Shown: one piece after another, positions 13,256 through 40,162 of the stretch
How the letters are laid out: every line of letters begins with the position of its first letter
Position numbering within the stretch: position 1 is the stretch's first letter
Source of the DNA: Selaginella moellendorffii
Taxonomy: Eukaryota; Plantae; Lycopodiophyta
Assembly (NCBI RefSeq): GCF_000143415.4
Contig: NW_003314322.1
Coordinates: forward strand, 1-64,000
Direction: 5' to 3'
Length of the DNA: 64,000 nucleotides
Program-made: the position numbers and the translations under genes
Notes under the pieces: model-generated
What the model saw: the letters and a program-made list of their open reading frames with translations, nothing else
The model's database searches: none
What the model was told of the DNA's origin: nothing

Positions 13256-13290
<35 letters not shown>

Positions 13291-13308
13291 TGTGTGCTGA
13301 AATTTTCT

Positions 13309-13883: not shown

Positions 13884-13957
13884 GTATGAGGAAAAATTCG
13901 AACTTGATCAAAAGAAATCCATGATTTTCCGTGTATACATACGTATCTTATGTCTAG

Positions 13958-15810: not shown

Positions 15811-15814
15811 GGGA

Positions 15815-20300: not shown

Positions 20301-20806
20301 TTTTGCTATCAAATTGGCAGCAACAGTGAATTCCTGAAGTATCATTATACTCTTTCTTTTGGTTTTGAAGTTTTACTTAATCAACTTAGCCGCAAAGACT
20401 CCTCATTGTCATTGGATAAATTGCTAGAAGACTTGCTAGCAGGGAGAGAATTAATGGCAATGCTGCTATATTTCCTCCTTTTCCCCTCTTCCCTTTATTT
20501 TTTGATAAACTGTGGCCTACCAGCCTTAGAAAAGGACAAACCCAGGATCTTTGCCAGTAATTCTTCCCCTCTTCTAGACGGCAAGAGTGGATGCAAGTGC
20601 TTAGCACTTGCATCATGCACCTACAAAGTTACTATGACTAGCTTGTACCACCAAAAGCTGTAAATGACTATTAACACTTTTTTAGACATGGCTATCTCTT
20701 TTTATTTTTTTCAGACTTACACGTTGTTCTGCTCCAAAGTATATATAACAACATCTTTTCATTTTACTTTCTCTACTTTTCCCAGCGGAGCTGGGAGCCC
20801 TGCTAG
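17399..20806 (+). mobile_element. Helitron unit ending the first array
   Basis: Exact CTAG|TC head-to-tail start (TCATCATCCTTCTATATTTAAAAG). Perfect TCCCAGCGGAGCTGGGA at 20780-20796, CTAG at 20803-20806 followed by T, then host DNA. Confidence 0.7.
17430..17670 (-). pseudogene. Inverted copy of SDR terminal exons
   Basis: AATTCYTALHPSLKDVTGQYFVDSNKS..LAHKLWTFSQD, with the same intron as 90-152. Confidence 0.8.
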
Positions 20807-21191
20807 TTTCTAGTGTTATACATGTTTTTCTTCATTATGCAGATTATTAAATGTGTCTCAAGATTTTAACATAGGGTCCATGTTTTTTCCAGAAATTAAA
20901 ATGTTAGCTCCTCTATACATCCTGTATATGCAAAAAAAGAAACAAAAGCCAACAGAAGAACCGACAAGTATTTTGCTGCAGCTTAACTTGTGCAAGGAGG
21001 AAGATACGTTGAGGGACTCTATTCGATTTTTTGGATCTTTCTGCATCACGACCTCGTCAAGAGGAGTGTTCCCTTGAACTTTACTAAATGCAGGAAAACA
21101 GAAACACCACTATTGTGACAAAGGACGCGTGGCGTGCCCTCATTTAACACAAAGAGTGCGCTGTTTGAGTGCGCTGTTCTTGGACGCTACC

Positions 21192-22268
21192 ATGGCGATG
21201 CTTGTTCTTCTCGTCCTGTTGGTCGTGGGTGCGTCGTCAGGTAAACTTAGCTACCATTGCGGCAATAACCATCAGAAAATTGCAGCAGGAGCGGAAAGAT
21301 TTGGCATTAACTACGGACGAGTTGCTGATGATCTTCCATCTCCACTCCAGGTCGCAGCGCTAGCAAAACGGGAGAATATTACACACATAAAGATTTTTGA
21401 TGCCGATCCTGTTGTTCTTCAAGCATTCAGGGGCACAGATGTTGGCGTTGTCGTCACAGTACCCAACGACGAAATACCTGCGGTAGCTGCAAACCTGCCT
21501 GGCGCACGGTTCTGGTTTGATGCATATGCTTCGCCCTTTATTGCGGAGATCACAACCATTTTGGTGGGCAACGAGGTCCTTAAATTCAGCCCACATATGT
21601 CGACAATCCTCGTTCCGGCGATGCAGAATCTCTACCAGATTTTGAGAGCCCACGATCTGGCAGATAAGATCAAGATCTCGACGCCGCATGCCATGGACGT
21701 TCTTGAAAAGAACTCGTCCTCTCCGCCATCAAATGGAATGTTCCGCCAGCAACACGTCAGCACAATGCAAAATCTTCTAGAATTTTTGTCCATCAGCCGC
21801 TCGTTCTTTGTACTCAATGTCTATCCTTACTTCGCCTTTAGGGAGGACAAGGGCGCCACACTCTCCGCCGAATTCGCTCTGCTCCAGTCCCCTAAAAACT
21901 CAGTCACGGATCCGAACACCAGCTTTCGGTACAGCAATCTGCTAGACGCTCAGCTAGATGCAGTGTATGCCGCCATAGAGAAACTGGGATATATGAATCT
22001 ACGGATTGTGATTGGGGAAACGGGATGGCCAACGGCTGGGGGCTTCGGAGCAACAATGCAGAATGCAGCCATTTTTATGAGGAACATAATATGCCGTACC
22101 CAGGACGTAGAAGGGACACCAGCAAGGCCGGCTTATACCATTCAGGCGTTTGTGTTTTCAATGTTCAACGAGGATCTGAAGCACAACCTCATGGAACAGA
22201 ACTTTGGTTTGTTTTATCCAAACATGACAAAAGTGTATCCTCTTAAATTTTCGTCTGACTGTAAATGA
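21192..22268 (+). CDS. Glucan endo-1,3-beta-glucosidase (GH17), secreted
   Basis: Signal peptide MAMLVLLVLLVVGASS; likely 45-48 nt intron from 21241 (GTAAAC..TGCAG); GINYGRVADDLP, VGNE (acid/base), NVYPYF, IGETGWPT (nucleophile), FSMFNE, EQNFGLF. ORF intact. Confidence 0.92.
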   Translation: MAMLVLLVLLVVGASSGKLSYHCGNNHQKIAAGAERFGINYGRVADDLPSPLQVAALAKRENITHIKIFDADPVVLQAFRGTDVGVVVTVPNDEIPAVAANLPGARFWFDAYASPFIAEITTILVGNEVLKFSPHMSTILVPAMQNLYQILRAHDLADKIKISTPHAMDVLEKNSSSPPSNGMFRQQHVSTMQNLLEFLSISRSFFVLNVYPYFAFREDKGATLSAEFALLQSPKNSVTDPNTSFRYSNLLDAQLDAVYAAIEKLGYMNLRIVIGETGWPTAGGFGATMQNAAIFMRNIICRTQDVEGTPARPAYTIQAFVFSMFNEDLKHNLMEQNFGLFYPNMTKVYPLKFSSDCK

Positions 22269-22781
22269 GAGGATGGATTATTTTGAGATGAGAAGAAATA
22301 ATAAATACTGCAGGCCTTTACCATAGGTCAGGCAGCAACTGACTACATTCATTTTTTGTTGTGTCACGTGTATCTTTATGCAACTCTTCCAAAGGCTCCA
22401 GTTTCCTGTTTTTCGTTGCAAGATTACATCTAAAGGGAGCACTCGAGCCAACAATACTCCAATGTAAAGTTTAGTTCCGCATGGCAATGAAAAATTCAGT
22501 GTTTAACCTTGTTTTGCAGAGCCTCTGCCTGCTGCGAATCTTCTGCGCTTGATAACCCGCCTGTGCATTATCGGTCCAAGACAGAAATTTAAGCAGGAGT
22601 GTGGCGGTTTTTGTTACATTGTCATTTGCTAGCCTTTCCGAAACGGGAACCACAGAAGGAACCCTGCAGGCTCTCTTGATTTTGGATCTCTAAAACCAGC
22701 AGAATGGGCAAAAGAAAAAGAACAGAAAGCAGCACTTGAATTTCAGCGGTGGAAATGGACGTTTCACAAGGATTAATTCAT

Positions 22782-23231
22782 TTAGTATACCTTTGACTCA
22801 GCGTCCTCCTGCTCCAATTGATCATCGCATGCAGCTGCATCCAGCTCCGCTTTCTCTACGGCAGCAGACGCATCCATTGATTGTGCATATGCTAAGAAAT
22901 AGGCCTTATATGCATTTGCAGCGGCTGATGTGAGTGCTTCCGTATTCTTCTCGGCAGCCTCGGCAATGTCCTTTAATCTCGCAAATTCGTCAGTACCAAC
23001 TGCTGCAGATGCAGCAAGGTAAGCGTCCGCTGCTTCTTCTGCCGCAACTGCTGCCAGACGTTCTGCTTCAGTCGCTGCTTCTGCTGCCAAAACCGATCGA
23101 TCTGCTGCTGCCGACAATGTGTCCAGGAGATCATCTACCGATGGCAACCGCTTGTCCAAAAGTTTCTCACTGCAGGACGAAGAAATGCCTGCGGTAGTTG
23201 ACAACTGCTGAAGAGGAAATGCACTTTCCAT
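22782..23231 (-). CDS. Ala/Glu-rich helical hypothetical protein (149 aa)
   Basis: Open, compositionally biased ORF with a splice acceptor ~20 nt upstream of the ATG. No family recognised. Confidence 0.5.
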   Translation of the reverse strand: MESAFPLQQLSTTAGISSSCSEKLLDKRLPSVDDLLDTLSAAADRSVLAAEAATEAERLAAVAAEEAADAYLAASAAVGTDEFARLKDIAEAAEKNTEALTSAAANAYKAYFLAYAQSMDASAAVEKAELDAAACDDQLEQEDAESKVY

Positions 23232-26200
23232 GTTTATTGGCAGAATGACAACCTGGAACCAAAAAGAATTGCAACGAACGGTTGCACCCCAGTTTGAAAA
23301 GCAGAATGATCTGAACCGCTAGATACAACAAGTGTGCAGATACTGATTTATGCTGACGTTGTCAGGGACGTGGCACAACCCGACTGTTCATCCAGTTTGG
23401 TTCAAACGCATAAACTTTGTGGTTGCCAACAAAAAATCATACTCACAGACAACCGAATTAGACGCCCTCTAATGGTGAAGCTTGAGACAGACAAATGTGC
23501 TGCTTCGTTTGCATCATATTTTCAGTCATCTTGAGTGCATTATTAAGCATATCAACGACTAAAACAGTCGATCACAGGGTAAGTACCTTGATTTTCTTGC
23601 AAAGAAAAAAAGGAGCTACCCGGTCAGATTATAAATCGAACTTGCCACCAAGCGCAAACATAGGTCCCTCTTTGAGAATGGTGAAGAATAATCTAGCCGA
23701 ACTTAGTGCTTTGCATCAATCTATCCCTGCGCTTCAAGAGCTTTGTGATCCACGGAGACCAAGATTTAGTTTACTTAGTTGAGAATGTCCTTCATTGCAG
23801 CAATGACAAAAATGGTGCCACCAGGATCCCATCAATGCTGCTCGTGGTGGAGCTTTTCCCACGGACGGGGATCCAGGATGGCTTATTTGTTTGAGGCTTA
23901 ATCTGATTTACATAACCTTGCCGTATAAAGTTACATGTTTAAGTTTGCGAAGAGGCTAGCAGCCTTAACGTTAATGATTAGGTGGGACACCGAAAAATAG
24001 AAGTTTTGATTGAAAGAAAAGTTTGACCACAAATGCATATTTATGAATGAAAGAATTTTCTGGGAAAAAATATTGCATTGACCAAATAAGATGTGGCTCA
24101 GAGTGATACTAAAGGGAACGGTCTAATGATATTGAAACATTCCTTGGTAGAAACATGCGTCACCATGCCTTCACGATAAGCTTGAGAATGATCCTCCCGT
24201 TATCTGTGATAACATATGTAGAAATCTACCTAATAGGTAGATTTACTGATCCTGCCAAGTCAATTATAATATTTTGCTTCTTCAAAGAACTGATGTACTG
24301 CCAAAACTCAGTTTCGAAATGGACACAATGGTCTTCCTTCCGGTCTTATGATTCATTTCGTTTATGTGGCCGTTGAAACTATGAAGTGGTGATGACTCTG
24401 CAAGCATAAGAAGTGTTAAGCAAGCAGACACTATATGCGAGCTTCAAATTAACATTTACTTACATTGAAGGAGAGAAGAAAAGAGCATAGTCAAATGAGT
24501 GTAATTCCTTTTGTCTCATTGTGGAGCTGAACATGTAAATATAAAGACATAGACTTTACTCCATGGATAAGTGATATCTGGTCCATGTTTCCAAAGACTC
24601 TAGCTTGATTGCTTATGGAGCATTCCTTACCTGGAATTCACAGCAGCAAGCACATGAATTTGCAGTACTGAGTCAGCGTCGTAAGAACTCTCAAGAACCA
24701 AGAGAGATATAATAAAATAGTTTAAAGAGTGAAGACGTCCAACTTACAAAACAATCGTCGTGGAAAGGAGTCCGAAATGGAATAAGAGAGCCTGCCAACC
24801 GTCTTCCATTCCCCAGTAGCCCTGCTGAGCACCATAACCCACCACCTATGCTGCTGCTACTCATGGAACCAAGAATTACTGTAAAGCTGTGATTGGAGAA
24901 TGCTTTCCAGGACGAGGAGCTATTGAAGGCCTTCCGCTATAGTGCCAACTTTCAATTGCTGTGATACAGATTGGAACGCCAATTATGGTATTGTCGATGC
25001 CCTACAGTTGCACGCCAATAGGGCAGGATGACCATGCTAGGAGCAAGAATCTAATGTCCTGGTAACTCCTTGATATTTCTATCTTCTCTCTGTTGGATGC
25101 CTACAGCTAGCGTATTTTAAGTAGCTCATAAATAGGCTCATTTCAGATCGTCTAGATTCAAGTATACAATTATTGTGGATGTTCATTTGAGTAGCTCAAA
25201 TGAACTAAAGACTTCGAGGAAGTCTTTAGTTATGCTTTTGGGTTTGGGTCTGTCGTTGATAATGGCCACCTTGCAAATCTATCTAAAACACACATACAAA
25301 TGAAATGTATGAGAAAGCACTACAATGAGGCTAGAAAGGTTATGGACACCAGCGCCAAGTTTCTGCGTTTACATGCAATTCCCCCTTAGTGTGCTATTTT
25401 CACGGTAAATAGTTTCTGCAGCACCTAGTGTGTTACACCATAAACGAAGTAATCAAATACGAAGAAAAGTGTTTAGAATTTCTCATTATTCTAGATATAC
25501 CCTTCCTTTGTCTGTTGATGATTGCCTTGGAAACCAAACCTTAGTAGCAAATGCTTTGTGTACTAGCTTATTTCTTCAGTAATGTATGATCCAGCATCTT
25601 TTGCAGATGTGCGATATGATGTATGTGCACTAAGAGTTAGTAAGTCTTAAGAATACTTGATCCATGAGCTTTGTTTAATCCATATTTGTTTCCTAAGCTG
25701 CGAATAAAGATTTTTTGCACCAGGTTTCTCTCGAGTTTCTTTTGGAAGTAAATGCGATGCTTCCTGGATTTAATGGTGCAGCCAGCTTAAAAAGGTGTGC
25801 TCAAGAATAGGCCTGGCTTCTTGGAGTCTGTCTCGACACTAAACACAAGCTCTATTACAATGTCATGCTGGATTGTTTTGGATTACCATTGCTGTTGATG
25901 ACTGGATCCTGGAAACTAAAGCTGTAATCCGAGATAATGGGACGGAACAATACCACTTCAAAATTGGCAAAAGAGGAAAGCTTTGATCAACTTTACCGAG
26001 GTCTAATGACAAGTGCTTGGAAAGAAGGTGCCAATGCACAAGACATGAGACTTTCAGAAAAGTCTGTACATGTGACAACAGCAAGAAGCTGCTTCAGAGC
26101 CTTGAGAACTTGATGTTTGTTTGCAAGTCACCTCCTGAAACAAGATGGTCGATTGGAAGTTTCTCTTGTAAACTTATAGTTTATGGAAGCATGCATGAAT

Positions 26201-26380
26201 ATCCCAGAGAACACACATATTTAAGAGAAAACACATTTCAGTGCTTTACCTTTAGTACGTAAGTGTTGTTTATGTCAACCAGGTTGTCGACTATCTTATA
26301 GTAGGTTATCCACTCTACGCAATGTGTATTGTGTTTTTTCTTGCTATCTCGCAATATGAGAGCTCATGTTTCTGTGCATA

Positions 26381-27260
26381 GGGGAGAATATCATCCAGCC
26401 ATGTGGGCTGGGAAGTATGTGAATAGCTGGCAGACATCACTTGATGTGAAAGACAGATGGCCACAGTAAAGTTCTTCTTTTTCCCTTTTCTGACCAGTTT
26501 TGCTTGCAGCATAGACTTGCTAGCGGATGACAACAATTTGTGGGCATCTCATGCTGGTCCCAGAGGATGGAACGGTGAGATCAGTGGTTGGCTTTGCATA
26601 AATTTCTCAAGTTTCTCTCTTTCAGATCCCGACATGCTCCAAGTGGGGAATGGTTGAATGTCCTTAGCTGAGTATCCTTCACATTTCAGCATTTGGTCTA
26701 TCATGAAGGTTTGTATGCTCATTTCTCATTAATCTAGACTAGAGTGCCTTGCCTCAAGCACCTCTCATCATTGGCTGTGAGTTGAGAACAATCACGAAAA
26801 TACACCTCAAAATTTACAAGAACATCCAGATAATAGTGGTAAACCAAGGTAAGTTCTTGAAGATTTGAGCCACTGCTTTCTCAGTATCTTTCTTTTGACA
26901 TGTAGATTCACTAGGAATACGGATGCAAAGTGAGTTGGATAGGACAGTTTGAGGTAATTACTTCTTGTAAGCATTGTGTGATCACGTAGGTGTGGGCTGA
27001 TCGTCTGCGATAGAATTGTCATGGTAGCATAGAACAGAGGGTGGAACTAAGCATTAATCAGGAACAATTCTAGATTGGAACCAAGTGTGACAGCAAGTGT
27101 GAGAGATTTGTGGAAGGTATGCAATACATTACACAGCTCACAATTGATATACATCTTTTTTTCTGTGTGGGTTATAGCACGAAGATTGGACTTCAAGGCA
27201 GGAGGATGGTTTTAAATAGATTCCCATGACTGTGGTATCTTGTCCAACATTTCCATGGCA
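26381..27260 (+). pseudogene. Alpha-galactosidase (GH27) 3' exons, disrupted
   Basis: GEYHPAMWAGKYVNSWQTSLDVKDRW, IDLLADDNNLWASHAGPRGWN, DPDMLQVGNG*MSLAEYPSHFSIWSIMK, IIVVNQ, DSLGI, VWA..SVRDLWK. Confidence 0.8.
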
Positions 27261-27619
27261 GAACTGTACTTTAATAGTGGAAGATGAACATGGGATGCCA
27301 ATACCACTGATTTGTAGTTAGAAAGTGGATTTTAATCTATTTTCTTTACTTCTTCAATCTAATATGTGTTTTGGCAAGGTTTTTGCAAATCTTACGTAAA
27401 ATGCCTCAATGATTGGAGAGCATAAAATTTATGTTGTTAAGGGTCGCATTTATACAGCAACCATGTCGCAAATCTACATCAAGCAGAAAAACCTCTGGCC
27501 TTTAACGGTTTCTTTGGAAAAAACGAGTCTCAAAGCATACCCCTTGCGCATTTGATTGAGCCCCCCATTGGCAGTCACTGAAAGGTAACCATTCGTCACT
27601 GCTGTGGGATCCAGGAGCG

Positions 27620-27818
27620 CTGGGGAATCTGAATTGGAAAGATGAACAATTTCGGCAGGCAGAGAGCTTTCCTCTGCCGCTGGGAATGTCGTGCTACTCC
27701 AATATTTTCTTCAGCAACAAGAGCTTCAGCGGATTTCTCTCAAAGGTGAAATCCTCGCTCCTGGACATTTCATGGACATTGTTTTTGGGCGGCCAGAGGA
27801 GGAGGCACTGGAGGTGAT
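27620..27818 (+). pseudogene. Short RanGAP fragment (duplicate of 28512-28710)
   Basis: SNIFFSNKSFS and DIVFGRPEEEALEV; near-identical to 28512-28710. Confidence 0.65.
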
Positions 27819-27819
27819 A

Positions 27820-28310
27820 GGCATTCATGAAAGAACACCTCGAAATTTACAAGAACACCGAGATAATAACAGTAAATCAAGGTAAGTTCTTGAAGATTGG
27901 AGCCACTGCTTTCTCAGTATCTTTCTTTTGACATGTAAATTCACTAGGAATACAGGGACACAAAGTGAGCCAGATAGGACAGTCAGAGGTAATTACTTCT
28001 TGTTTGACATTGACAAAGCATTGTGTGATCACGTAGGTGTGGGCTGGTCCTCTGCAATAGAATTGTCATGGCAGCATAGAACAGAGGGTGGAAGCGTGCA
28101 TTAATCAGGAACAACTCTAGATTGGAACCGAGTGTGACAGCAAGTGTGAGAGATTTGTGGAAGGTACATAATACATTACACAGTTCACAATTGATATACA
28201 TTTTTTGTTCTGTGTGGGTTATAGCATGAAGATTGGACTTCAAGGCAGGAGGATGGGTTTGAATAGATTCCCATGACTGTGGGGTGTATATCTTGTCCAA
28301 CATTTCCATG
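27820..28310 (+). pseudogene. Duplicated GH27 alpha-galactosidase C-terminal exons
   Basis: Direct repeat of ~26805-27363: DSLGIQGHKVSQIGQSE, VWAGPL, NRGWKRALI, SVRDLWK, DSHDCGVYIL. Confidence 0.75.
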
Positions 28311-28417
28311 GCAGAACTGTACTTAAGAGTGGAAGATGAACATGGGATGCCAATACCACTGATTTGTACTTAAAAAGTGGATTTTAAATCTATTTTCCTT
28401 ACTTCTTCAATCTAATA

Positions 28418-29070
28418 GGATCCAGGCTGCTTTCCAGGCTTCGCTAGCGGCAATCCTGTGGTAGTGGTGAAGATCTATGCTCGAGAGGTGAGCTGGATGA
28501 TGCTAGAAGTGCTGGGGGAATCTGAATTGGAAAGATGAACAATTTTTGCCGGGCAGAGAGCTTTCCTCTGCTGCTGGGAACGTCGTGCTACTCCAATATT
28601 TTCTTCAGCAACAAGAGCTTCAGCGGATTTCTCTCGAAGGTGAAATCCTCACTCCTGAACATTTCTCGGACATTGTTGCTGGGCAGCCAGAGGAGGAGGC
28701 ACTGGAGGTGATGCCTACGCTTGGGCAGGCGTTCTAAACCTCTTGGACAATCAGAAGGGTGTGAGGCGCTGCTAAAGTCCCAGGAATTGCTCAAGGAGCT
28801 CTCTTTCATGAACGATGGGATCTCCATTGTGCTGTATGCGAGATCGTCACCACACCACCGCCAGCTCTCTCAAGCTCTTCCACTTCCACAACAACATGAC
28901 TGGTGATCAAGGAGTCAGATCTCTCACCAGGCTTGTCGAGAAGGTTGTCCAGCTCGAGAACTTTCGCTTCTCGTCGACTAGAGTTGGGGTGGCACTGGCT
29001 TTGGCCATCGCTGGTGGATCCACCCTCAAAGTTCTCGACTTGAGAGACAACAGGTCCTGGAGGTGGTGCT
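28418..29070 (+). pseudogene. Plant RanGAP fragment (end of WPP domain plus LRRs), heavily deleted
   Basis: VKIYAREVSWMMLEVL, FSDIVAGQPEEEALEVM, KELSFMNDGIS, LKLFHFHNNMTGDQG, LENFRFSSTRVG, LKVLDLRDN. Confidence 0.8.
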
Positions 29071-29358
29071 GTGCTTAAATTGAGTGATTTTTTGTTCTCT
29101 CCCATGGTCCCGAGTGACAAGGCGCAAGATTTAGAGGCGGCCAAGGCCACAATCTCCATGACACCGCAGCTCCAAGAATGGACATCGTGTACCTGTTGAT
29201 CTCCGATTCATGCTCTTCATGGCAAGCCACCGTGTATGAGAGATACATTGGGAATGGGTTCGAGGGCGTGGTTTTCATCCCAGTCTCCAGGAGGAGGATA
29301 GCGAGAGCATGAGCTATCTGGCCTCTCTGCTGCTGGACAATGGCGTCATGACCAGAGA

Positions 29359-29860
29359 TTGTCTTTTGGAGTCCTTCACCTCAGACACACCTCAAGAGGT
29401 GGACGGCCATCACCTTCCAAGGTTGTGGACACCATTGAGAAGAATTACATCCATTTCCAAAGCACGATCAGTGGTTCACCGCATCAGAGGCTTGCGGACA
29501 AGGTGAGGTGCCACGTCGCAAGGAATGTTCCACTCGAGTTTGTCTTGCCGGCATTTCCAGTCGACTCGTGCAATCCCGACAAGACTCTGGGAAAGTGCGC
29601 GGACTAGGCCGAGGAGCTGGCCATCCATTCCATGAAGATTGTTGCGGATCTCATCATGCTCCAGGCATGCACTACAACGTCGCCTCGGATGGCCATGTCT
29701 TCTCTGATCTCGTCGGCTCCGATGATGCTGCTGTGGATTCTTATGGAAAGATGTTTTGGGAGATGGCACACAATTTGTATCTCGGCTTGGTCAGTTTCTT
29801 TAGCCTGGACGAGTGTCTGCTGGACAACCACAGTGAGGACAAAATTGCCAACCTTTTATC
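29359..29860 (+). pseudogene. Isocyanide (isonitrile) synthase PvcA/IsnA/Dit1-family N-terminal fragment
   Basis: PLEFVLPAFPVDSCNPDKTLGKCAD*AEELAIHSM, frameshift, PGMHYNVASDGHVFSDLVGSDDAAVDSYG. Matches the family motifs LPAFPxKS.N..K.LG..PD..E.LAL and PG....SDG.VF.DL.G..D..V..Y. TAG at 29605-29607. Confidence 0.75.
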
Positions 29861-30081
29861 CAACACGGCAGTGGAACATCCAGTTGTGAAATTATTTACG
29901 TGGAAAATTTCAACCATGTTGAATCTACATACCGTGCCATGAAAAAACTTTCCCGGATTTTGTACATAAGTTAAAGAGCGCTCTACATTTCCCTGGCGCT
30001 GCTGTTGTTTTCACATATGCAACCAGGAAACGGGCTGGCAAAGAAAAAGTCTTCGTGCATTGGGACGGGAGCGGGAACTCT

Positions 30082-31075
30082 TAGCGCTGGACCTGCAGTC
30101 CTCACTTCGTGCAGCATTTTCACTTGAAACGCAAATTCATCCCAAGACATATTCCCAGCTCCATAGCTACCGAATAAGCTTTCGCCTGGAGGAGAGTGGA
30201 ACGAACGTTAGAGAACTGGAGAAAATAAACGTAGCATGAAGCCATGTGTCCATCATGCGTGAACACGAAGACATCGCTCTCAAGTGCCACTGCGTAATCC
30301 ACAGCCGAGAGCCTCTTTTGGTACCCGGCGATCGTTGATAGCTCCTCATAAGTTGCCAACGTTGAATGCGAGTACACGTCTGGAAAGATCTTCTTCAGCG
30401 ACGCCATGCTGCCATTCCCATAAGTTTCCCTGGTGACAATGTAGATGGCCGTGGTAAGGGCTTTGAGAAAAAGCCCAGTCTCGTAAGGGGTTAGAGGACA
30501 ACCACCTTGCCTGCGTTTCTCCTCGCTTTCAATTTCCTTCTCTTTCCAATGCCCCACGTCGTATCTCATGCGCTTCAGTTCTCGTGCTTCCTCGGTGGGC
30601 AAACCGTGTGTACGTCCAGTAAAAGACAGCATATTTTTTTCGTATCTGCAACGAGCAATTAGAGAAAGAAACACAACCTCAAGTTTTTCACAACCTGAAT
30701 GCAGCGCAATGAACGGGCCTATACTTTTCATTCTCTTGATCAGCGCGTCTGCTACTCTTTGCAAAGGTTCTGTAATCTTGAGTGCATGATAATTTGCACG
30801 GCATCTCAGCCTCTGGATCTCATCCGGAAGGCCGTTGTTGGCAAGCCTCGATTCTGCATGCGTCAGGTGCAAAACCTTGTGCTCTTTGAGCAATACCGTC
30901 ATGTTGTTTCTATAGTATGATTCCTGGAACTGTACAAAGATAAAGCAACCATTTGCATAGACAAAAACTAAAAGCTTACATTGGACCAGGATACAGGAGC
31001 CTTGCGGAAAGGAACGACATCCTGCAGAGAGGGAGATAGCGCTTCAATAATAGACACGTCTTTGTCAAAAATAGT
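30082..31075 (-). pseudogene. O-fucosyltransferase-family (GT106/RRT-like) glycosyltransferase, 5'-truncated
   Basis: SRLANNGLPDEIQRLRCRANYHALK, GPFIALH|RYEKNML, RRQGGCPLTPYETGLFLKAL, AVDYAVALESDVFV. The called ORF reads through introns and has internal deletions. Confidence 0.8.
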
Positions 31076-31149
31076 TTACGGAAATCGCTGAGAAGAAACA
31101 GTAAGTTGAAACGACAAACTTTGATTCTAGAGCTTCACAAGGAAACAAT

Positions 31150-31720
31150 TCTACGGAGATAATCACCAAGATTTTTACAGTGATCCAGAAGAGTTACAAC
31201 GATACTTATAGAGAAGAGACTCCCAAGATATATGATACATGGTCTGTGACACCCTGGATTCCCTGGAAGTCAGGTTGCTGTCTGATGATAGCGTGAATCC
31301 ATTCAAGCTCACCAAGTCTCGGTGCTTGATGTGGCCAAGAACTGCAAGCTCCATCTCAAACTCGTGTATTTTGAGAGTGGTGATTGTAAAGCCACTTGGT
31401 CACTGCTTTCTTGCCGTAATTCAGGCGGGAGCAATGATCAACTGCCGAGTTGAGCATCATCTGGTCCTCTAAAGCTTCAACAAGCTGCTTAGAGCTATGG
31501 ATTACAGTGAAAGAACTTTCTGTGGAGGCTTTTCCATCGTCCCAAAAATGAAATAGAGAGAAGCCAAGCTCGAGGAAAACCGCACTGGGAAAGAATGATG
31601 GATCAAATGCATTCACTCGAGAAACACCACACACAAAAGAAGCCTCGAAACTTGATTGCATGCTTTTCTAGAGAAAGCTCTGCCAGGATTCATCATCCAT
31701 GCTTTTTGTTGTTTTTTTTG
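31150..31720 (-). pseudogene. Possible degenerate microbial-type class I terpene synthase (MTPSL-like)
   Basis: LFHFWDD (Asp-rich motif-like), RV*DGA, IRQQPDFQGIQGVTDHVSYI..LFS (NSE-region-like), HCKNL. Intronless, with many stops and frameshifts. Confidence 0.35.
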
Positions 31721-32654
31721 AACATACGATTCTCTTTCTTTGCGGGTTTCTTTGCTGAGTTTTCTGGCTCATAGCCACTTCTCAGACACGGCCACAGTCA
31801 TCCATTTCCTCCTGTTTGAACATGCATTTTCTGTGGTTTCCATCCCATTGTTTCCGTGAATGATGTTACTGATGATAATAGTTTCAGAAAAGAACTCTAC
31901 CAAAGAAAAAAGAACATTTAGAAGAAAAGATATTCAGAAATTGTACATTCTCCTTTTTGTAACATGCTCCCTTTTCAACTTCATGGACTCCACAGCAAGT
32001 TCTTTTTTGTACAAAATAAAGTTCTCATAATCTTGTGGAAACGATGATGCTCGACTGGGATGTGCGCATGAATTGCTTGCTTTCGGCTTATGTCCAGTAT
32101 GGGTAATATCATGTACAATGTCTGGGCGAGACCGCCGTGTCCGAGAACTATGCTCTGGTTACGGTGCAATTAGAAAATGTGTAATCCTGGTGGCCATCAC
32201 TCCCGGGAAGGTAAACCCATCATGTAACTGTTTTCAAAGAAACAGATATGTACGGTTTAGTGTTTTTTTATTTTCGAAAAGTGTTTAGGTTAAACTGTAT
32301 GATTATACGAAAAAAATGTCTGCACGTCATTCCAATTCACAAACCTAAGAAAACTAGAACATTCATTGTGGATTTTGCATCAAGAAATGTTCAAGAAGAA
32401 ACAATTCAAATACAACGAATCTCTATCACCATCATCATACTCCCTTATTTAAACGTGCTATTGGCATATGGCATCCGGCGTCTTTTATTCCATTTTTAGA
32501 ATATTATTTCTGAATATGCTTATAATCTAACGGTTCAAATTCAAAAACTTCAAATAGATGGTATAGATCAAGTGCCAAAGGGGTGGCAACTCTTCAATTT
32601 TTTAATGACGATCCAAATCAAGAGAAAAAATTTAGGGCGATCGGGCAGATTGTG

Positions 32655-32656
<2 letters not shown>

Positions 32657-32727
<71 letters not shown>

Positions 32728-32733
32728 TGTGTG
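32657..32733 (+). repeat. Compound (CT)n(GT)n microsatellite in Helitron 5' region
   Basis: Directly visible. Shorter versions at 6097-6150, 13256-13296 and 44236-44258. Confidence 0.9.
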
Positions 32734-33007
32734 CATCTGTGTGGTGAAATTTTCTATTTGCTGCGTTTGATCGGACTGGCTGAGACTGACGAGCCAGCCG
32801 TGCAAAAAAAGTGGCCGTGACAAAGATGGTCTTCCCAATCCTTACGAGCACCAGTCCCAAGTGAGTGTTCTATTCATTGTCGTTTAGAGAAAAAAAAAAA
32901 AAAACTTTTTCCTGTTGTTCTTGCTTGTTTGATTTCTCTGATTAGAGCTCGCAGGTGGATTTGCTGCTGAGCTTTTGCCAGCAACTAAAATTCTCATCGG
33001 TCGTGCT

Positions 33008-33536
33008 TAGGGCGATCGGGCAAATTCATACAGGACAAGCTGCCAGGCAAAGAAAAAATCATTTCCCCAGGGAGATGAAGAATCTGTAAGTTTTCTGTTG
33101 ATCACATCTTCCTCTTTTTCCAGCTTTTCTCCAATTTCTCTTTCTGCATAATCTAAAGTTCTTTCCTTGACCCTGGCAGAATTTCTTTTATAAATATATC
33201 GTCAAGCTCAGGTGTGGCAAGTGCTTTCGATCCACAGCAATCTTCCTAAGGGTGGCAACGCTTCAATTAATGACGCTCCAAGTCAAGTGAAATTTTTTAG
33301 TGCGATCAGGCAAATTCATACAGGACAAGCTGCCAGGCAAAGAAAAAATCATTTCCCCAGGGAGATGAAGAATCTGTAAGTTTTCTGTTGATCACATCTT
33401 CCCCTTTTTCCAGCTTTTCTCCAATTTCTCTTTCTGCATAATCTAAAGTTCTTTCCTTGATCCTGGCAGAATTTCTTTTATAAATATATCGTCAAGCTCA
33501 AGTGCGGCAAGTGCTTTCATCCACAGCGATCTTCCT
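33008..33536 (+). repeat. Two-copy ~290-bp-period tandem duplication
   Basis: GGCAAATTCATACAGGACAAGCTGCC...CCACAGC.ATCTTCCT occurs twice; the spacer is Helitron 5'-region sequence (AAGGGTGGCAACGCTTCAAT). Confidence 0.85.
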
Positions 33537-33639
33537 CTGGAAGAGCGACAAGGATGATGAGCAGTTGCCACTGCTTGTTAACAGCAAGTTCATGCTCTGC
33601 AAAGGTTGCGAGGGATGGCTGACAGACCAGAGAAGTTTT

Positions 33640-34433
33640 GGAACTTGCTGTCGAGGAGTGCAAGCTCACCATTTCCAGGATCAAAGCACTGTTTCTAAGC
33701 TCTTCGTTGCGCCTGCCATCCAAAGTTTCTGGATGGTGTGATCAAGGAGGAGAAGAACATATTGTGGACATTGATCCAGGATATTCGAGCTCCAAAGGAA
33801 TAGTTTTGGTGCATGGTTTTGTCTTCTCTTGGAGGCATGTAATGGCTCCGCTAGCTCAACAAACGGGCCACAGTGTTGCTGCGTTTGATTGGCCTGGCTG
33901 GGGACTGACGAGCCGGCCAGGCAACAATGGTGGCCGTGACAGAGATGGTCTTCCCAATCCTTACAAGCTCCATTCACAAGTGAATGTTCTATTCATCGTC
34001 GTCTAGAAAAAAAATGAGTTTTTTCTGTTGTTCTTGCTTGTTTGATTTCTCTGATTAGAGCTCGCAGGTGGATTTGCTGCTGAGTTTTTGCCAGCAACTA
34101 ACATTCTCATCGGTCGTGCTCGTTGGTCACGACGACGGTGGATTGCTTGCTCTTATGGCAGCTGCCAGAGCTTGAAATCTCTAAGCTCAATGCAGGTAAG
34201 CTCCAAGCCACTATAGTCATGGATTTTCATTTCTGTGATGAAGGTGGTGATCAAAGGTGTGGTTTTGATCGCGGTGAGCTCCTCCAGAGAGGTGATATTG
34301 CCATTTGCTCGAGTTTTGCTCCACACTTCTTTGGGACGCACATACTCCGGCCATTGCTGTGCCTGGAGATGGTGAGTCGCCATGCCTGGCACGATGCTTC
34401 CAAGCTCACCTCCAAAGTGATGGAACTTTACAA
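33640..34433 (+). pseudogene. Alpha/beta-hydrolase internal exons (captured)
   Basis: GIVLVHGFVFSWRHVMAPLAQQTGHSVAAFDWPGWGLTSRP..LPNPY, VVLVGHDDGGLLALMAA, ..WHDASKLTSKVMELYK. Confidence 0.8.
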
Positions 34434-34529
34434 GGTATGAGGAAAAATTCGAACTTGATCAAAAGATTTCCATGATTTTCCGTGTATACATCGATCCAGG
34501 TATCTTTTCTATCTTGTTGTGATGTCTAG

Positions 34530-35296
34530 GCCATTTTCTTCTCACAAACTTGCTCCTGGACAAAATGAAGGAGACCGCTAAGGAAAGTGTTTGTCAATCT
34601 CTCCTCCATCGTGCATATTGCCTCTTACAGCGGTGGAATCCAATTCTCACACCTTAATGACAAAGCCTGGTACACCAAACAACTCTCTTTTCTCGTGAGC
34701 TTACATTATTCCTTTTTTCTTGCAAAAGGTACTCCAACACTAGAGCATACAGTCAATCCAAGCTCACGAACATCTTCCACGCCAAAGAACTGGCAATGAG
34801 ATTCAAGGTATTCATCTAATGCTTTGAAATCTCTCCCACCTTTCTCTTTCGTCAATGCTTTCTCTTTCGCTGATTAGGCCGAAGGAGTTGACAGCACAGC
34901 CAACGCTGTTCATCTAGGGTTTATAATGACACCTTTGATGCGGTACACATTCTACATAATGAGTTTGTCTCTTTGCCTTGTTTGTTTTAGGTTACTTATG
35001 GAACTTTGATCTTCATGCAGGGGTTCTCAAGTTCTTCTCCAGCTTCCTTTGGAAAAAAGTCCCACAGGTAAGAAGAATTCTCCCAATTATCTGGAAGTTT
35101 TTTGTGACTAATACGTGATCAGGGTGCTGCTACGACGTGCTACGCAACTTTACATCCAAGCCTCAAGGATGTCACTGGGCAATACTTTGTGGATTCCAAC
35201 AAATCCAACTGTAGCACTTATGGCAGAGATCCCAAGCTCACTCACAAGCTATGGACCTTCTCCCAGAAGCTTATAGACAAGCATTCTCCGTCCTAA
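34530..35296 (+). pseudogene. Tic32-like SDR, last five exons (captured)
   Basis: GHFLLTNLLLDKMKETAKES, YSNTRAYSQSKLTNIFHAKELAMRFK, EGVDSTANAVHLGFIMTPLMR, FLWKKVPQ, GAATTCYATLHPSL. Confidence 0.82.
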
Positions 35297-38200
35297 AGGT
35301 AAAAGGTTGATTTATATATTAATATGATACCTAATTATATAATTTGAACTTTTATATTCTCTGAAATATAAGTATCAACAATGTTATTTTTAGAAAATAA
35401 CATGAAGAACTATTGAGAGTAAAATGCAATAGTAACACTTTACCCACAAATGATAAGCTTAATATGACAAAAAATTTCTCAAAAAAGTATTAGATAATTA
35501 AAAATTGATATTATTTTTATATGACTTTAAATAATGTATAATATACAAAATTTTATAATATTAATATTTACATAATAATGTGTTAGATCCATGTTTACAA
35601 TTAAAACATGAATACTTTCATAATCTAGGTTAATCTGTAATCATGTTCAGCTTTATATAATTTCTGAATAGTAACTAGTGTTAAATATTTTAATATAAAT
35701 TTATTTTTAACTTGGAATCCATAGTTTTATCATAAAGCATTAGTACCTGTTTGCCTTTATGCAAATATTATATCTTTAATATAATAAATAATTTTGGTTG
35801 TACCTCTTTTCAAACACCTCTAATGTAGTGTGAATATCTAGGTAGATTTACTTATGTATATTTTTAAATGTGAAATCAGATACATAATAGAAATTTTATT
35901 ATTCTTTAGTAAACTATTAAAGTTAGAGGCATCAGATAAAAATAGTTTAGCTCAATATGCAATCAAGATTATAATTTTAAAAAAAAAACCTATTGATTTT
36001 TAAGTATATATAATTCTTTAGTTTTATGAAAACCCAATTTCTTTAGTAAAATTAGTAAACTTTCACATTATTTTGTTGTACAAAGATTGTATATAGTAGA
36101 CACAATATGAAATTTACTATAAAGTAAAAAATGAAATAAAGTTGTGATTATAGAAAATGATATATTTCATAACTTCAAATATAAGAGTTGAATGGCTCCA
36201 GCTATTTTATCTTATAAATTATTTTTAGGTTTATCAATAATCTTATGATACTTATTACACACTCATCAATGAATCTAATCACATTAAGTTGTTGGATAGC
36301 TCAGATATAGTCTAAGATTTATGTAATATCATAAAATGATAATACTGTTTTTAAGACTAATAATTTATGCATTGATACATGGGAAACATATAAATAAATA
36401 TAATGACATACAGGTAAAAATATGATTGAGATAACATTAGACACAATACAAAAGGCTACAATCTAAAAAAATGTTATTCCAGGGAAAAAATGATTATGCA
36501 TCATCAATACCCTAATATCAGAGTAAAACCTTACCTTTCACTGAAAACTTTCAGCCTCAAAAAAAAATTTTAAATGCCATAAATTTAAATAATAATAAAT
36601 GAAAGATAAACATAATAATCTTAATTTTTATAAGCATTATCTCTATATAAAAACATATACAGAAATGATTTTAATTATATTCAAAATACTTCAAATTTTA
36701 ATTATTACTAAACTCCATAACAATGTTTATAATTTTTAAATTTATAAGATATATGTAGTTTAAGTAAGTTTTAAATTTTTTTAACATTATTATATTTTAG
36801 TGTAACTAAAGTAACACTTTATTAAATAAAAAATTTGTACTTTTGAATGAATGATCAAGTGTTGATATTTTTTATCAATTATATAGCTTTCAAATAAAGG
36901 AAAAAATTAGTTACCAAAACTCAAACTCTAAATGACTCATCTGGCCATGGGATTCCAAAGTTAGCAATTCCATTTATAGAAGATCCTAGACTTCACTCAA
37001 CAATCAGATTTTTAAATGTGATATAATGTTATTAATTATATTTATTATAATCTGATGTCTGTTGGTGATATAGTCAATTGTAGAAGGGTTTTCTAATATA
37101 AATATTATATTATGTTTAACTATGTATGTTATCATTATGATTATGTTAAAAATTACATTTATGATTACAACTCTTTGAAATTACTAAAACATCAGAAATA
37201 AACATGATACTCCCAGTGTAGCTCAGACTTTAGTCACTAATTTTCATTGCTCCCAGAACTGATATTGTTATTATACTATATTAAATCAAGTAGAATAAAC
37301 AAATATAATAATATTTTTATTTAGGTGCACCATCTAAATTCTAAATTTTGAAGTCATAACTTCCATAAAATTTTATAATCATAACTTCTAGCATGTTATC
37401 ACCTAATTATAATCCTGATGAAGCATAGTTTATTATTTTTAACTTTATTCCTAACAATATATATATATTTAATTGGAAGTTTTCTTACTACTTTGTAACC
37501 TGAATCTCTTTTCATGAGAAGTTCAATTTGGCCACTCATTTTAACATTTTGAATTCTTATTTCTATAAAATTTCCTTCTTATTTTATGTTTTTTCTTCTC
37601 AAATATTTTGTCTTTTAATCATTTGAATTTCATAGTAGTTATCTTTTATATTATAAGTTACAAATGTCTTACACACTTTTGATATATTGGTAAAGTATAT
37701 TCTGTATTATAGGTGTATTAATATTTTTATTTTTTAATATATTATTAAGAAATGGATTTGATATTTGTATGTGTATGAGATAGCTTATACCTATTACATA
37801 CCAAGAATCATTCTCTATTGTCATGATTTTTAATATAAATGTGGTAGCAATTAGGACAAAATTTACTTAGTGGGTTTAATAGTAATGCAGAGCTCAGATA
37901 GTGAATTTGAATATTAAAATAGAAGAGTTTAATATTAGGCTTATAGAAGTTTATTGGTTAAAAACCAGATATTAGATTTTGTATTTGAAGCAAGAAAGAA
38001 AATATAAAGATGTTGCTACTCTTTTGAAATACATTAGTATTAATATTAAAAATATATTTTATTTTTAATAATTAGAGAAATATTTGGTGTTATATACATC
38101 TGAAAAAATAAATTATTAAGGATATCTCAAAATATTAGTAGTTTTATTAGTAAAAATAATTTTCCAAATCATTTTTAGTCTTCAAGATTAATATTTCTTA

Positions 38201-38889
38201 CAGCATCCATCATAAAATTAATATAACTCATTTGATGTTGTCAAGATTGCATGGAGTTATGCATCCAGGTTGACTGTGAGAATTGCTCATCCCTTGCTGA
38301 GTGTGGCAAAGTTTCTTAAGTCAGAGTTCTCCTTGTTTGATATCTCCTACCTGGCTGTAAATTCCTTGGCACAATGCTCCTGGCTGCCATGGAATCAAAG
38401 ACGTGCTGGTTGTGTTCTTTGCTCTCCACACACAGATATCGAGAAACTCGCTGTTGGTTTGGGCAAATCCCATTTCCATCAGAATGGAACCAGCTCATTG
38501 CTGCTGATCCAAAACCAGTTTTTCATGTTCAACAGCATCACCACCATCACAAGGATCACTTTGCAAAGCCACCATCGCTAAAATCCCAGCAGGGCAAAAG
38601 TAGAATCTGGGATGCAAAGGATGAGGCTGGGAATCCTGAAATCCCATGCTCTTGTTGCGGCAGGTTGAAGGTAGGGACTTTGTTCTTTGTGTCATCTAAG
38701 AATTCTAAGCGAGTTTCTGGCTCTTTCTCATTTTTTTTCTCTCTTTTGTGTTTGGTAGTATGCTCATCAAAAGTGTGTGTAGCACTGGTGCAATGAAAAA
38801 GAGGACACCATCTGTGAGATTTTTCAGCAGGTACATCATCTATTGTCATGTTTGCTGATTTCAATCATTCTTTAGTTTTGAATGAAGCC

Positions 38890-39662
38890 GAGGTAGAGCT
38901 CCATTCCTAAGAGTTATGACACAACACTTAAGAACTTAACTACAAATGTGGATTTCTGCACAAGGGTCACCAACTTGTTGCTGCTTCCGCCACTGCATGA
39001 TGTTTGTGATTTTCTTGCTCAAGCTGGTCATGAGAAAAAACAAAAGCCATAAAAGGCACAGGTTAGAATCAAAGCTGTAAGTCTCAGTAGCAACCAGTAG
39101 TAGTAACAAGGTAAGGAATTTTTTTGTTCATGCCGCTGAGGTTTCTAAGCAAGTTTCTGGCTTACCTTGCTCGTGTTCAATCATTCTTTCGATCATTTTT
39201 TTGTTTCTTTTTCTTTTTCTTGATGTCTGGTGCCTCACTTATGTTTTGCAGCCTTTTAAATGCTACACAGCACCAATCCAATCTCCTGCTGCTCTTATTG
39301 CTCTCTACCTGATGACCACTTGAGGTATGTGTAGTCTTTTCCTTGACGTGCTCGCTAGATTCCTCATAATTTCGTTTATAAAGTTTTTCGGTAGTGCTGC
39401 TTTTTTCATTGAGCAAATTCTGTAAAGCTGAGGTAGAGCTCCATTCCTGAGAATTGTGCTTAAGAACTTTCATAGAAGGGTCACCAAACTGTCACTATTG
39501 ACATTGCTGCATGATGTCTGTGATTTTGTGGCTCAAACTTGTCTTGAGAAAAACCAGTTAAGGCAGGAAAAAAATGACTAAAAAGGCATGAAGGACTTAC
39601 AAACCTGGTAAAGCTGTAGAATACACAGATTGGAATCAAAGCTGTCAGTCTCAGTAGCAACC
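38890..39662 (+). repeat. Diverged direct duplication (~38890-39095 vs ~39430-39662)
   Basis: GAGGTAGAGCTCCATTCCT...AATCAAAGCTGT.AGTCTCAGTAGCAACC is present twice. Confidence 0.7.
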
Positions 39663-39786
39663 TATAAAATAAACATGCCAAGAGAAAGCAAAAAAAGAAA
39701 TAGATTGAACAATTATAATTACAACTACATTTTTTCAAATTGAAAATATTCTCTACTACTCCCAGCGGAGCTGGGATCCCTGCTAG

Positions 39787-40162
39787 TACTCATATATTTA
39801 AATGAAAGAGCCCGTATAATAATAGCATATACTGGCGACACTTATTTTGGGCATATGCTGAGATCTAACGGCCAAGATCTAATTGTCGAAGGTCATGTCG
39901 TTTCAACTCAGAGAAAAATTCAATGTGGCTTTTTAGGGCTGGAAAAAAGCCATTCAGCAACGGGAGAGGCAGCGGGCAGATGTACTCCCTCCTGGATTCT
40001 GTTCTTGCAGACTACTCATATTTTCCACTGGAGGTATGAATTCGATGCCCGATTCTTCGCGGATTGGCATTTTCTCTTTGTTTTCTCAAACAAGTTTTAA
40101 TAAATTGTTCTCTTTTTAGAATTAGCATCTAACCATCCCAGCGGAGCTGGGTTCCCTGCTAG
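39787..40162 (+). mobile_element. 376-bp minimal Helitron unit
   Basis: TACTCATATATTTAAATGAAAGAGCC start; hairpin at 40137-40151; CTAG at 40159-40162. Confidence 0.8.

What the first reader, a model, noticed from the sequence alone, without database searches (positions are those of the whole stretch)
29359..29860. Microbial isocyanide-synthase (PvcA/IsnA/Dit1) relic in a land-plant genome
Seen: FVLPAFPVDSCNPDKTLGKCAD*AEELA and PGMHYNVASDGHVFSDLVGSDDAAVDSYG, intronless, with one stop and one frameshift, embedded among plant gene fragments. Established: these motifs mark the DIT1/PvcA family, which makes isocyanides from amino acids in bacteria and fungi and is not a standard plant enzyme family. 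Inference: the other fragments here are copies of host genes, so an intact parent may exist elsewhere in this genome. That would imply horizontal acquisition and possibly unrecognised isocyanide chemistry in a seed-free plant.
Basis: partly seen in the sequence, partly recalled or inferred. Interest (0 to 1): 0.8.

Follow-up and report, generated by a model that had tools for sequence, protein, structure and literature searches.

The report
Dead isocyanide-synthase gene scrap in Selaginella
This is a broken, half-length leftover copy of one of the spikemoss Selaginella moellendorffii's own fungal-type isocyanide synthase (DIT1/PvcA) genes; the intact, conserved gene family elsewhere in the genome is unusual for a plant but is already catalogued, so this locus is an ordinary pseudogene.

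Summary
Window 29084-29887 (+) is an 805-base copy of the 5' part of a DIT1/PvcA (PF05141) gene. Both quoted peptides pass Pfam's threshold.

The window is Selaginella moellendorffii scaffold GL377626.1, bases 1-64000.

The scrap keeps the usual start codon (29348) and residues 1-184 of about 386. It has one stop codon, five frame-breaking indels and a 39-base micro-inversion, and it lacks the whole 3' half.

A second copy on scaffold GL377566.1 has the same junctions and the same lesions. It is annotated as the chimeric "hypothetical protein SELMODRAFT_403268". This argues against an assembly error or contamination.

The inferred intact parents exist. The NCBI records hold more than 20 gene models of this family; four intact ones compared here have dN/dS of 0.06-0.09. 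Their nearest non-plant relatives are chytrid fungi. The scrap nests inside the plant clade, so it is an internal duplicate and not a separate transfer.

The family was already listed by Lim et al. 2018 and named by RefSeq. This scan has also reported intact copies and two other scraps on other DNA of this genome.

How the piece got here is unresolved. The candidates are a repair-type patch and transposon capture in a Helitron-rich area.

Interest is low.

The parts
29084..29887 (+). DIT1/PvcA (PF05141) pseudogene fragment. It copies gene bases ~110-943 of an intact ~1548-base family gene (P0020 codons 37-313 of 515).
   Evidence: blastn to seven intact gene loci, 74-84% identity with gaps and 84-88% counting substitutions only in the core clade; alignment; Pfam hits
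29348..29350 (+). Retained ATG of the shorter (386-394 aa) family gene models (MTRDCLL...). About 264 bases of parental upstream sequence precede it.
   Evidence: Projection onto P0020: MTRDC is residue 130 and maps to window 29348. Pfam domain starts at residue 55 in the 386-aa model P0145 and at 51 by Table S1.
29167..29205 (.). 39-base micro-inversion relative to all intact paralogs, shared with the GL377566.1 copy
   Evidence: Reverse-strand blastn matches to L002, L005 and L006; 'opposite strands' joint at 29164/29205 in run X1
29404..29491 (+). Cluster of four frame-breaking indels: +1 after 29404, +1 after 29420, -1 after 29453, net -8 at 29479-29491
   Evidence: Pairwise alignment to the P0020 gene; multiple alignment; loose ends of paralog contigs carry the intact letters
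29605..29607 (+). Premature stop TAG where the three intact paralogs shown in the alignment have AAG (Lys); shared with the GL377566.1 copy
29650..29660 (+). Site of a 10-base deletion after 29655.
   Evidence: the loose end behind 29656 in run X10 reads the parental letters
28505..29076 (+). Left neighbour: decayed RI-type LRR gene fragment. RanGAP-like from my own recall only. It ends where the DIT1 scrap begins.
   Evidence: PDB phmmer best hit is a ribonuclease-inhibitor-type LRR, E 3.8e-4; no Pfam hit; a contig of run X10 (guessed RNA) matches only 28881-29052 with unlike sequence on both sides
29897..31063 (-). Right neighbour: 3' half of an O-fucosyltransferase gene copy that keeps short introns. 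It is truncated upstream.
   Evidence: Pfam O-FucT profile 185-317 of 326. A 1370-nt X10 contig lies on it at about 95% identity and skips 30923-30978, which reads GT..AG on the minus strand; its first 340 nt find no match.

Best explanation
Window 29084-29887 is a non-functional partial DNA copy of one of Selaginella moellendorffii's own DIT1-type isocyanide synthase genes. It holds about 264 bases of upstream sequence plus codons 1-184 of about 386.

Shown: the copy has sharp ends. It sits between a decayed LRR gene fragment and a truncated O-fucosyltransferase copy. It lacks the C-terminal 55-60% of the PF05141 domain and is broken by one stop codon, five frame-breaking indels and a micro-inversion. 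It was already dead before the two assembled copies of this locus diverged, and it shows relaxed constraint.

Inferred: it encodes no enzyme and does nothing. It arose by copying a stretch of a family gene into this site, either as a templated patch during double-strand-break repair or as a small ectopic duplication.

The biology of interest lies in the intact paralogs elsewhere in the genome. They are fungal-like and under strong purifying selection.
For: - Family: Pfam hits on both pieces.
- Extent: alignment to intact genes L002-L008 has identical end points in every comparison.
- Damage: lesion list.
- Completeness: intact paralogs cover profile positions 1-266/269 at about 278 bits, against 1-34 and 54-118 here.
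- Second copy: L001 (GL377566.1) is collinear with window 22233-32394, with the same junctions and the same lesions. It is 97.4% identical in aligned bases.
- Source: the window is GL377626.1:1-64000 of GCA_000143415.2.
- Origin within the plant: in the DNA tree the two relic copies (100% support) nest inside the core Selaginella clade, next to P0020 (77% support).
- Selection: dN/dS is 0.06-0.09 among intact genes, 0.16-0.26 for relic versus intact genes, and 1.37 between the two relic copies (2 synonymous and 10 non-synonymous changes).
- Flanks: they match nothing in seven DIT1 loci.
- Transcription: contigs of run X10 (guessed RNA) that lie on 29485-29656 are about 92% identical and carry the undeleted parental letters, so they come from intact paralogs and not from this copy.
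Against: - The copying mechanism is not shown.
- No sampled family member is closer than about 87% at protein level or 88% at DNA level, so the actual parent is unidentified or lost.
- The between-copy dN/dS rests on only 12 differences.
- Absence of transcription rests on Logan contigs of a few runs, which cannot prove absence.
- The neighbourhood is rich in Helitron-like ends, so transposon capture is a live alternative for how the piece arrived.
Confidence: 0.9

Rival explanations
1. The scrap is cargo of a Helitron or other fragment-capturing transposon. The whole mosaic (LRR piece, DIT1 piece, O-FucT piece, Melibiase piece) would have been assembled and moved by the element.
For: - Four fragments of unrelated genes lie side by side on both strands.
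- Helitron-like 3' ends (a 7-bp GC-rich hairpin, 6 bases, then CTAG|T) end at 17399, 20807, 39787 and 40163, with none expected by chance.
- An earlier scan note reports Helitron capture of a gene fragment in this genome.
- Summed depth of similar contigs is high across 28-32 kb.
Against: - The scrap lies between the end at 20807 and the repeat block that starts near 32400. No element end brackets it.
- No inverted repeat of 30 bases or more exists in 20-40 kb, which argues against Pack-MULE or CACTA.
- The high depth is expected from the gene families themselves.
- Only two copies of the composite are known, and they look like the two haplotypes.
Confidence: 0.25
2. The scrap is a processed (retro-copied) pseudogene made from a DIT1 mRNA.
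For: It has no introns.
Against: - The parents are intronless too, so lack of introns says nothing.
- The copy keeps the 5' end and lacks the 3' half. This is the opposite of typical retrocopies, which are truncated at the 5' end (established knowledge).
- The right end (29887-29903) has no poly-A tract, and no clear target-site duplication is visible.
Confidence: 0.03
3. It is an assembly chimera, fungal contamination, or a separate second transfer from a microbe.
For: The family is otherwise fungal or bacterial.
Against: - The same junctions occur in two independently assembled scaffolds, each collinear for about 10 kb with plant genes (GH17, and an O-FucT copy with a short intron).
- The scrap nests inside the Selaginella clade at 84-88% DNA identity, whereas the intact plant proteins are only 37-44% identical in protein to the nearest fungi.
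Confidence: 0.01
4. The LRR fragment and DIT1 scrap together form a young functional chimeric gene, as the annotated model SELMODRAFT_403268 suggests.
For: A 322-aa gene model was called over the sister copy.
Against: - That model reads much of the DIT1 part out of frame and scores only 25.9 bits, below Pfam's cut-off.
- The two copies differ by extra indels (24 and 2 bases deleted in L001) and show dN/dS of about 1.4.
- No contig of the run guessed to be RNA matches this copy itself.
Confidence: 0.02

Closest known systems
Intact DIT1-family genes of Selaginella moellendorffii (e.g. XP_002973595.2 = P0021; also P0019, P0020; the SELMODRAFT_99xxx/103xxx models)
   Same: The scrap shares 84-88% DNA identity over 29084-29887, gene order, start codon and motifs (FVLPAFP..., SDGHVFSDLVGSDD). 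It nests in their clade.
   Different: The intact genes are 386-521 codons long, carry the complete PF05141 domain (about 278 bits) and have dN/dS of 0.06-0.09. The scrap has 47% of the canonical ORF, one stop and five frameshifts, and Lys changed to Asp in the FPVKS motif.
Fungal Dit1 / isocyanide synthases (S. cerevisiae Dit1, A. fumigatus ICS proteins; chytrid homologs)
   Same: They belong to the same Pfam family. Chytrid proteins are the nearest non-plant relatives of the plant family at 37-44% identity, and Sel+chytrid form a clade with 93/93 support.
   Different: Those are working enzymes, often paired with a Dit2 P450 or fused to dioxygenase or NRPS modules (PMC5974471). The locus here is a dead fragment with no partner genes.
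Bacterial isonitrile synthases PvcA/IsnA (PDB 3e59, 9dhm, 9dh4)
   Same: The two pieces align in the same order to residues about 46-79 and 99-168 of these 315-330-aa enzymes.
   Different: The matches are weak (E 3e-4 to 2e-2). About half of the fold is missing here.
Other DIT1 scraps noted by this scan in the same genome (s1-353427, s1-394639)
   Same: They are also broken partial copies of the same gene family, lying among unrelated DNA.
   Different: They are at different places and have different extents. I did not inspect their sequences.

Membership tests
DIT1_PvcA (PF05141) isocyanide synthase family: sequence descent | Significant match to the family HMM above the gathering score | tested here: met
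   29.5 and 46.9 bits against a 26.4-bit cut-off for the two pieces
DIT1_PvcA (PF05141): functional member | Complete domain (profile about 1-270 of 273) | tested here: not met
   Only profile positions 1-34 and 54-118 are present. Intact paralogs cover 1-266/269. Homology stops at 29887.
DIT1_PvcA (PF05141): functional member | Uninterrupted reading frame | tested here: not met
   TAG at 29605-29607 and indels of +1, +1, -1, -8 and -10 after the ATG at 29348
DIT1_PvcA (PF05141): functional member | Purifying selection | tested here: inconclusive
   Relic versus its sister copy gives dN/dS 1.37, but from only 2 synonymous and 10 non-synonymous changes. The relic lineage shows excess dN compared with intact pairs (0.065-0.074 against about 0.03).
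DIT1_PvcA (PF05141): functional member | Isonitrile or N-formyl-tyrosine forming activity | not testable with these tools
   Needs an enzyme assay. It is only meaningful for the intact paralogs.
Processed pseudogene (retrocopy) | Loss of parental introns, a 3' poly-A tract, and a target-site duplication | tested here: not met
   The parents have no introns to lose. There is no poly-A at 29887-29903, and the 3' half is missing rather than the 5' half.
Pack-MULE / CACTA-type captured fragment | Terminal inverted repeats that bracket the cargo | tested here: not met
   No inverted repeat of 30 nt or more in 20000-40000. The self-blast shows no bracketing inverted pair.
Helitron-captured fragment | The fragment lies between a 5' TC end and a 3' hairpin+CTRR end of one element, with further copies elsewhere | tested here: inconclusive
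   Helitron-like 3' ends lie at 17399, 20807, 39787 and 40163. No 5' end was defined, the scrap lies outside the recognisable repeat block 32416-39787, and a genome-wide copy count is not possible with these tools.
Horizontally acquired gene family (applies to the family, not the scrap) | The nearest relatives lie outside plants, while the genes are embedded in true plant DNA | tested here: met
   Among named hits only Selaginella and fungi appear. Sel+chytrid clade 93/93 and Sel monophyly 100/100. The loci lie on megabase plant scaffolds among plant genes. The tree is unrooted, so the direction of transfer is inferred from distribution.

The most novel reading that the evidence does not exclude
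The scrap could be transcribed as part of a chimeric non-coding RNA. It keeps about 264 bases of parental upstream sequence and is 84-88% identical to 20 or more active paralogs. Such an RNA could act as a source of small RNAs or a decoy that tunes the DIT1 family. My data neither show nor exclude transcription of this copy.
Probability: 0.03. Interest if true: 0.4.

Novelty: new member of a known kind. Interest (0 to 1): 0.15.

Why it matters
This locus matters little by itself: it is one more dead fragment of a multi-copy gene family. Its value is as a pointer and a control.

It independently confirms that a fungal-type isocyanide synthase family has been resident in true Selaginella DNA long enough to duplicate, scatter fragments and decay. 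That argues against contamination.

The intact paralogs are the real target. They are under strong purifying selection (dN/dS 0.06-0.09), they are already named in RefSeq and listed in Lim et al. 2018, and my paper searches found no study of them. They could give a land plant isonitrile or N-formyl-tyrosine chemistry.

Tried and rejected
- **Word search.** The 144-aa piece found nothing. This is a length-filter blank, not evidence of absence, and the exhaustive search then found the family.
- **Pfam on the LRR pieces.** No hits. The 'RanGAP-like' label rests on my recall; the only test was a PDB hit to a ribonuclease-inhibitor-type LRR.
- **Read evidence.** Only Logan contigs were available. 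The best runs held at most 0.21 of the sampled words, and no listed contig bridges the junctions. Junction support therefore comes from the two scaffolds instead.
- **Possible empty site.** One run X1 contig joins 29076 to 29904 and so skips 827 bases, almost exactly the scrap. It has only 29 bases on its shorter side, a depth of 11, and it lacks about 5 bases of the O-FucT flank. It could be an empty site or a later deletion, and I give it little weight.
- **Search for a recent parent.** No sampled member exceeds about 87% protein identity.
- **Helitron scan.** It found real-looking 3' ends, but none brackets the scrap.
- **Earlier scan notes by sequence.** Two look-ups on the flanks were blank.
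- **Paper searches.** Selaginella combined with isocyanide, DIT1, 'dityrosine biosynthesis' or 'spore wall maturation protein' found nothing relevant.
- **Restrictions.** The frame-corrected peptide, with X at each break, was used only inside a script for identity counts.

Full report
**Observation.** One lies in frame 1 and ends at the TAG at 29605-29607. The other lies in frame 3 from about 29652.

Pfam's DIT1_PvcA model (PF05141) hits both pieces above its 26.4-bit gathering score. The first scores 29.5 bits (E 6.7e-7, profile positions 1-34). The second scores 46.9 bits (E 3.3e-12, profile positions 54-118 of 273). Both pieces also align, in the right order, to solved isonitrile synthases: PvcA 3e59 residues 49-79 and 103-157, and 9dhm/9dh4 residues 46-78 and 99-168.

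**Source of the window.** A GH17 glucanase encoded at 21192-22265 is found exactly, at the same coordinates, on scaffold GL377626.1 of assembly GCA_000143415.2. The proteins of that assembly carry NCBI names of Selaginella moellendorffii. So the window is GL377626.1:1-64000. The surroundings are plant DNA:
- the GH17 gene;
- an O-fucosyltransferase copy with a short GT-AG intron;
- an alpha/beta-hydrolase exon;
- a Ty3/gypsy retrotransposon.

**Intact relatives.** The word search with the 144-aa piece was blank because of its length filter. The exhaustive representative search returned 18 hits.

The best hit, P0001, is 322 aa and 93% identical. It is EFJ36672.1, 'hypothetical protein SELMODRAFT_403268'. 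This is a chimeric gene model laid over a second copy of this very locus on scaffold GL377566.1 (L001).

The next hit, P0002, is an intact 520-aa protein. Searching with it found P0019-P0023 (498-521 aa), all named 'spore wall maturation protein DIT1 [Selaginella moellendorffii]', plus partial and chimeric models. The 90%-identity cluster of P0021 alone holds 22 member sequences. Two of these proteins (P0019, P0020) and the 386-aa model P0145 were scanned: they cover PF05141 positions 1-266/269 at about 278 bits. Four of the genes (P0002, P0019, P0020, P0021) are intronless. Pairwise dN/dS over the canonical ORF is 0.06-0.09, so the family is under strong purifying selection.

**Anatomy of the scrap.** blastn of 28400-30600 against seven family gene loci gives the same end points each time. 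Window 29082/29093-29884/29889 aligns to gene bases ~110-949, and the flanks match nothing in those loci. Projected onto the P0020 gene, the scrap covers codons 37-313 of 515.

The ATG of the shorter (386-394 aa) gene models (MTRDCLL...) is kept at 29348. The scrap therefore holds about 264 bases of parental upstream sequence plus residues 1-184 of about 386.

Lesions after the ATG:
- +1 base after 29404
- +1 base after 29420
- -1 base after 29453
- net -8 bases at 29479-29491
- AAG changed to TAG at 29605-29607
- -10 bases after 29655

Lesions upstream of the ATG:
- a 39-base micro-inversion at 29167-29205
- further indels of 1-8 bases between 29145 and 29291, among them a 3-base deletion after 29145 and about 13 bases net lost at 29278-29291

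In addition, the Lys of the conserved FPVKS motif is Asp here. Everything 3' of gene base ~943 is absent, which removes about 55-60% of the Pfam domain.

**The second copy.** L001 is collinear with window 22233-32394. The differences are a ~1-kb tandem duplication present only in the window (26789-27818 against 27822-28712) and an inversion at 31272-31966. Within the scrap the two copies are 97.4% identical in aligned bases. They share both outer junctions and every lesion listed above. L001 has extra deletions of 24 and 2 bases.

The assembly is known, from my own knowledge of Banks et al. 2011, to hold both haplotypes, so these are most likely alleles. In either case the piece was already dead before the copies diverged, and the junctions have been assembled twice. 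This argues against a chimera or a contaminant.

**Origin.** In a DNA tree of the homologous ~750 columns, the two scrap copies (100% support) nest within the core Selaginella clade, next to P0020 (77% support). They branch after P0022 and P0023. Substitution identity to core members is 84-88%, similar to the identity among the core members themselves (86-91%). No listed family member exceeds about 87% protein identity to the frame-corrected scrap. The scrap is thus an old internal duplicate of a plant-resident gene, not a separate transfer.

The relic lineage carries excess non-synonymous change: dN is 0.065-0.074 against about 0.03 among intact pairs. The two relic copies differ by 2 synonymous and 10 non-synonymous changes, giving dN/dS 1.37. 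This fits neutral decay, though the numbers are small.

**Transcription.** Contigs of a run guessed to be RNA (X10) lie on 29485-29656 at about 92% identity. They carry the parental letters at the -8 and -10 deletion sites and match P0019 exactly there. They therefore come from intact paralogs. No contig specific to the scrap was listed. Contigs cannot prove absence.

**How it got here (inferred).** The scrap abuts a decayed RI-type LRR fragment that ends at 29076. On the other side it abuts the 3' flank of a truncated O-FucT copy, whose homology to its paralog begins at 29897. By the L001 annotation a Melibiase_2 fragment lies further left.

- **Terminal inverted repeats.** No inverted repeats of 30 nt or more exist in 20-40 kb, so Pack-MULE or CACTA capture is not supported.
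- **Retrocopy.** A retrocopy is unlikely, because the copy keeps the 5' end, lacks the 3' half and has no poly-A.
- **Helitron.** Helitron-like 3' ends (hairpin TCCCAGC-GGA-GCTGGGA, 6 bases, then CTAG|T) end at 17399, 20807, 39787 and 40163, with none expected by chance. Two related blocks, 10950-17015 and 32416-39787, end in such termini. But the scrap lies between these elements, not demonstrably inside one.
- **Possible empty site.** One X1 contig joins 29076 to 29904 and skips almost exactly the scrap. Its short side is only 29 bases and it lacks a few bases of the O-FucT flank, so it may be an empty site or a later deletion.

I favour a templated repair patch or a small ectopic duplication at about 45%. 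I put Helitron-type capture at about 25-30%. This step is inference.

**Comparison with what is known.** The plant family's nearest named relatives are chytrid fungi: Blyttiomyces and Zopfochytrium at 44%, Powellomyces at 37%, and Geranomyces. In a 29-protein tree Selaginella is monophyletic (100/100). It groups with chytrids (93/93) and is separated from Ascomycota Dit1 (100/100). The tree is unrooted, so the direction of transfer is inferred from distribution.

The family is not new:
- Lim et al. 2018 (PMC5974471) state that eukaryotic ICS proteins occur in fungi, ten oomycetes, one amoebozoan and 'one species of moss'.
- Their Table S1 lists about 23 SELMODRAFT models with PF05141.
- RefSeq names the proteins.

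My paper searches found no study of their function in Selaginella. This scan has already reported intact arrays (s1-422936, s1-358600, s1-431087) and two other scraps (s1-353427, s1-394639) on other DNA of this genome. I re-tested the core claims myself: organism, intact family, chytrid affinity and purifying selection.

**Verdict.** Interest is low for this locus. The intact paralogs remain a worthwhile biochemical target.

Noticed in passing
window 17373-17399, 20781-20807, 39761-39787, 40137-40163 (+); degenerate copies near 5900 and 17015: Helitron-like 3' termini: a 7-bp GC-rich hairpin (TCCCAGC-GGA-GCTGGGA), 6 bases, then CTAG|T. There are four copies against none expected by chance. The sequence downstream differs at 17399 and 20807, and is shared in tandem-like units at 39787, 40163 and 5900.
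   Followed up: partly
window 10950-17015 vs 32416-39787: Two related 6-7 kb repeat blocks at 68-95% identity, with their internal order rearranged. Both end in a Helitron-like terminus and both carry an alpha/beta-hydrolase fragment (33638-34440 and 13311-14369). AT-rich parts recur at 3213-4016.
   Followed up: partly
window 26789-27818 vs 27822-28712; 31272-31966: A ~1.03-kb tandem duplication at about 90% identity, covering Melibiase and LRR fragment pieces, is present here but single-copy in the GL377566.1 copy. A ~700-base segment is inverted between the two copies.
   Followed up: partly
L002 2346-4027 and L008 1-239 (loci of intact DIT1 genes): Two different intact DIT1 loci each have a PF02458 'Transferase' (BAHD-type) gene within about 4 kb. 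L002 also has a FabA-like dehydratase next door. This may be chance, or a hint of a metabolic gene cluster.
   Followed up: no
L005 4806-5781; proteins P0003, P0004: A DIT1 gene sits next to a GT22 mannosyltransferase fragment. Two annotated chimeric models fuse decayed DIT1 pieces to mannosyltransferase sequence. This suggests that a DIT1+GT22 unit was duplicated and decayed at further sites.
   Followed up: no
L002-L006, first ~129 codons of the RefSeq DIT1 models: The N-terminal extension in the RefSeq models (absent from the older SELMODRAFT models) shows dN/dS of 0.23-0.53, against 0.06-0.09 for the canonical ORF. It may be a weakly constrained leader or may not be coding at all.
   Followed up: partly
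window 44593-51524 (-): A Ty3/gypsy LTR retrotransposon. It has gag, RT, RNase H and integrase ORFs, and its LTRs (44593-45167 and 50948-51524) are 94.6% identical.
   Followed up: partly
window 56310-58163 (-): A 617-aa open reading frame that looks like a coiled-coil protein and has no Pfam hit.
   Followed up: no
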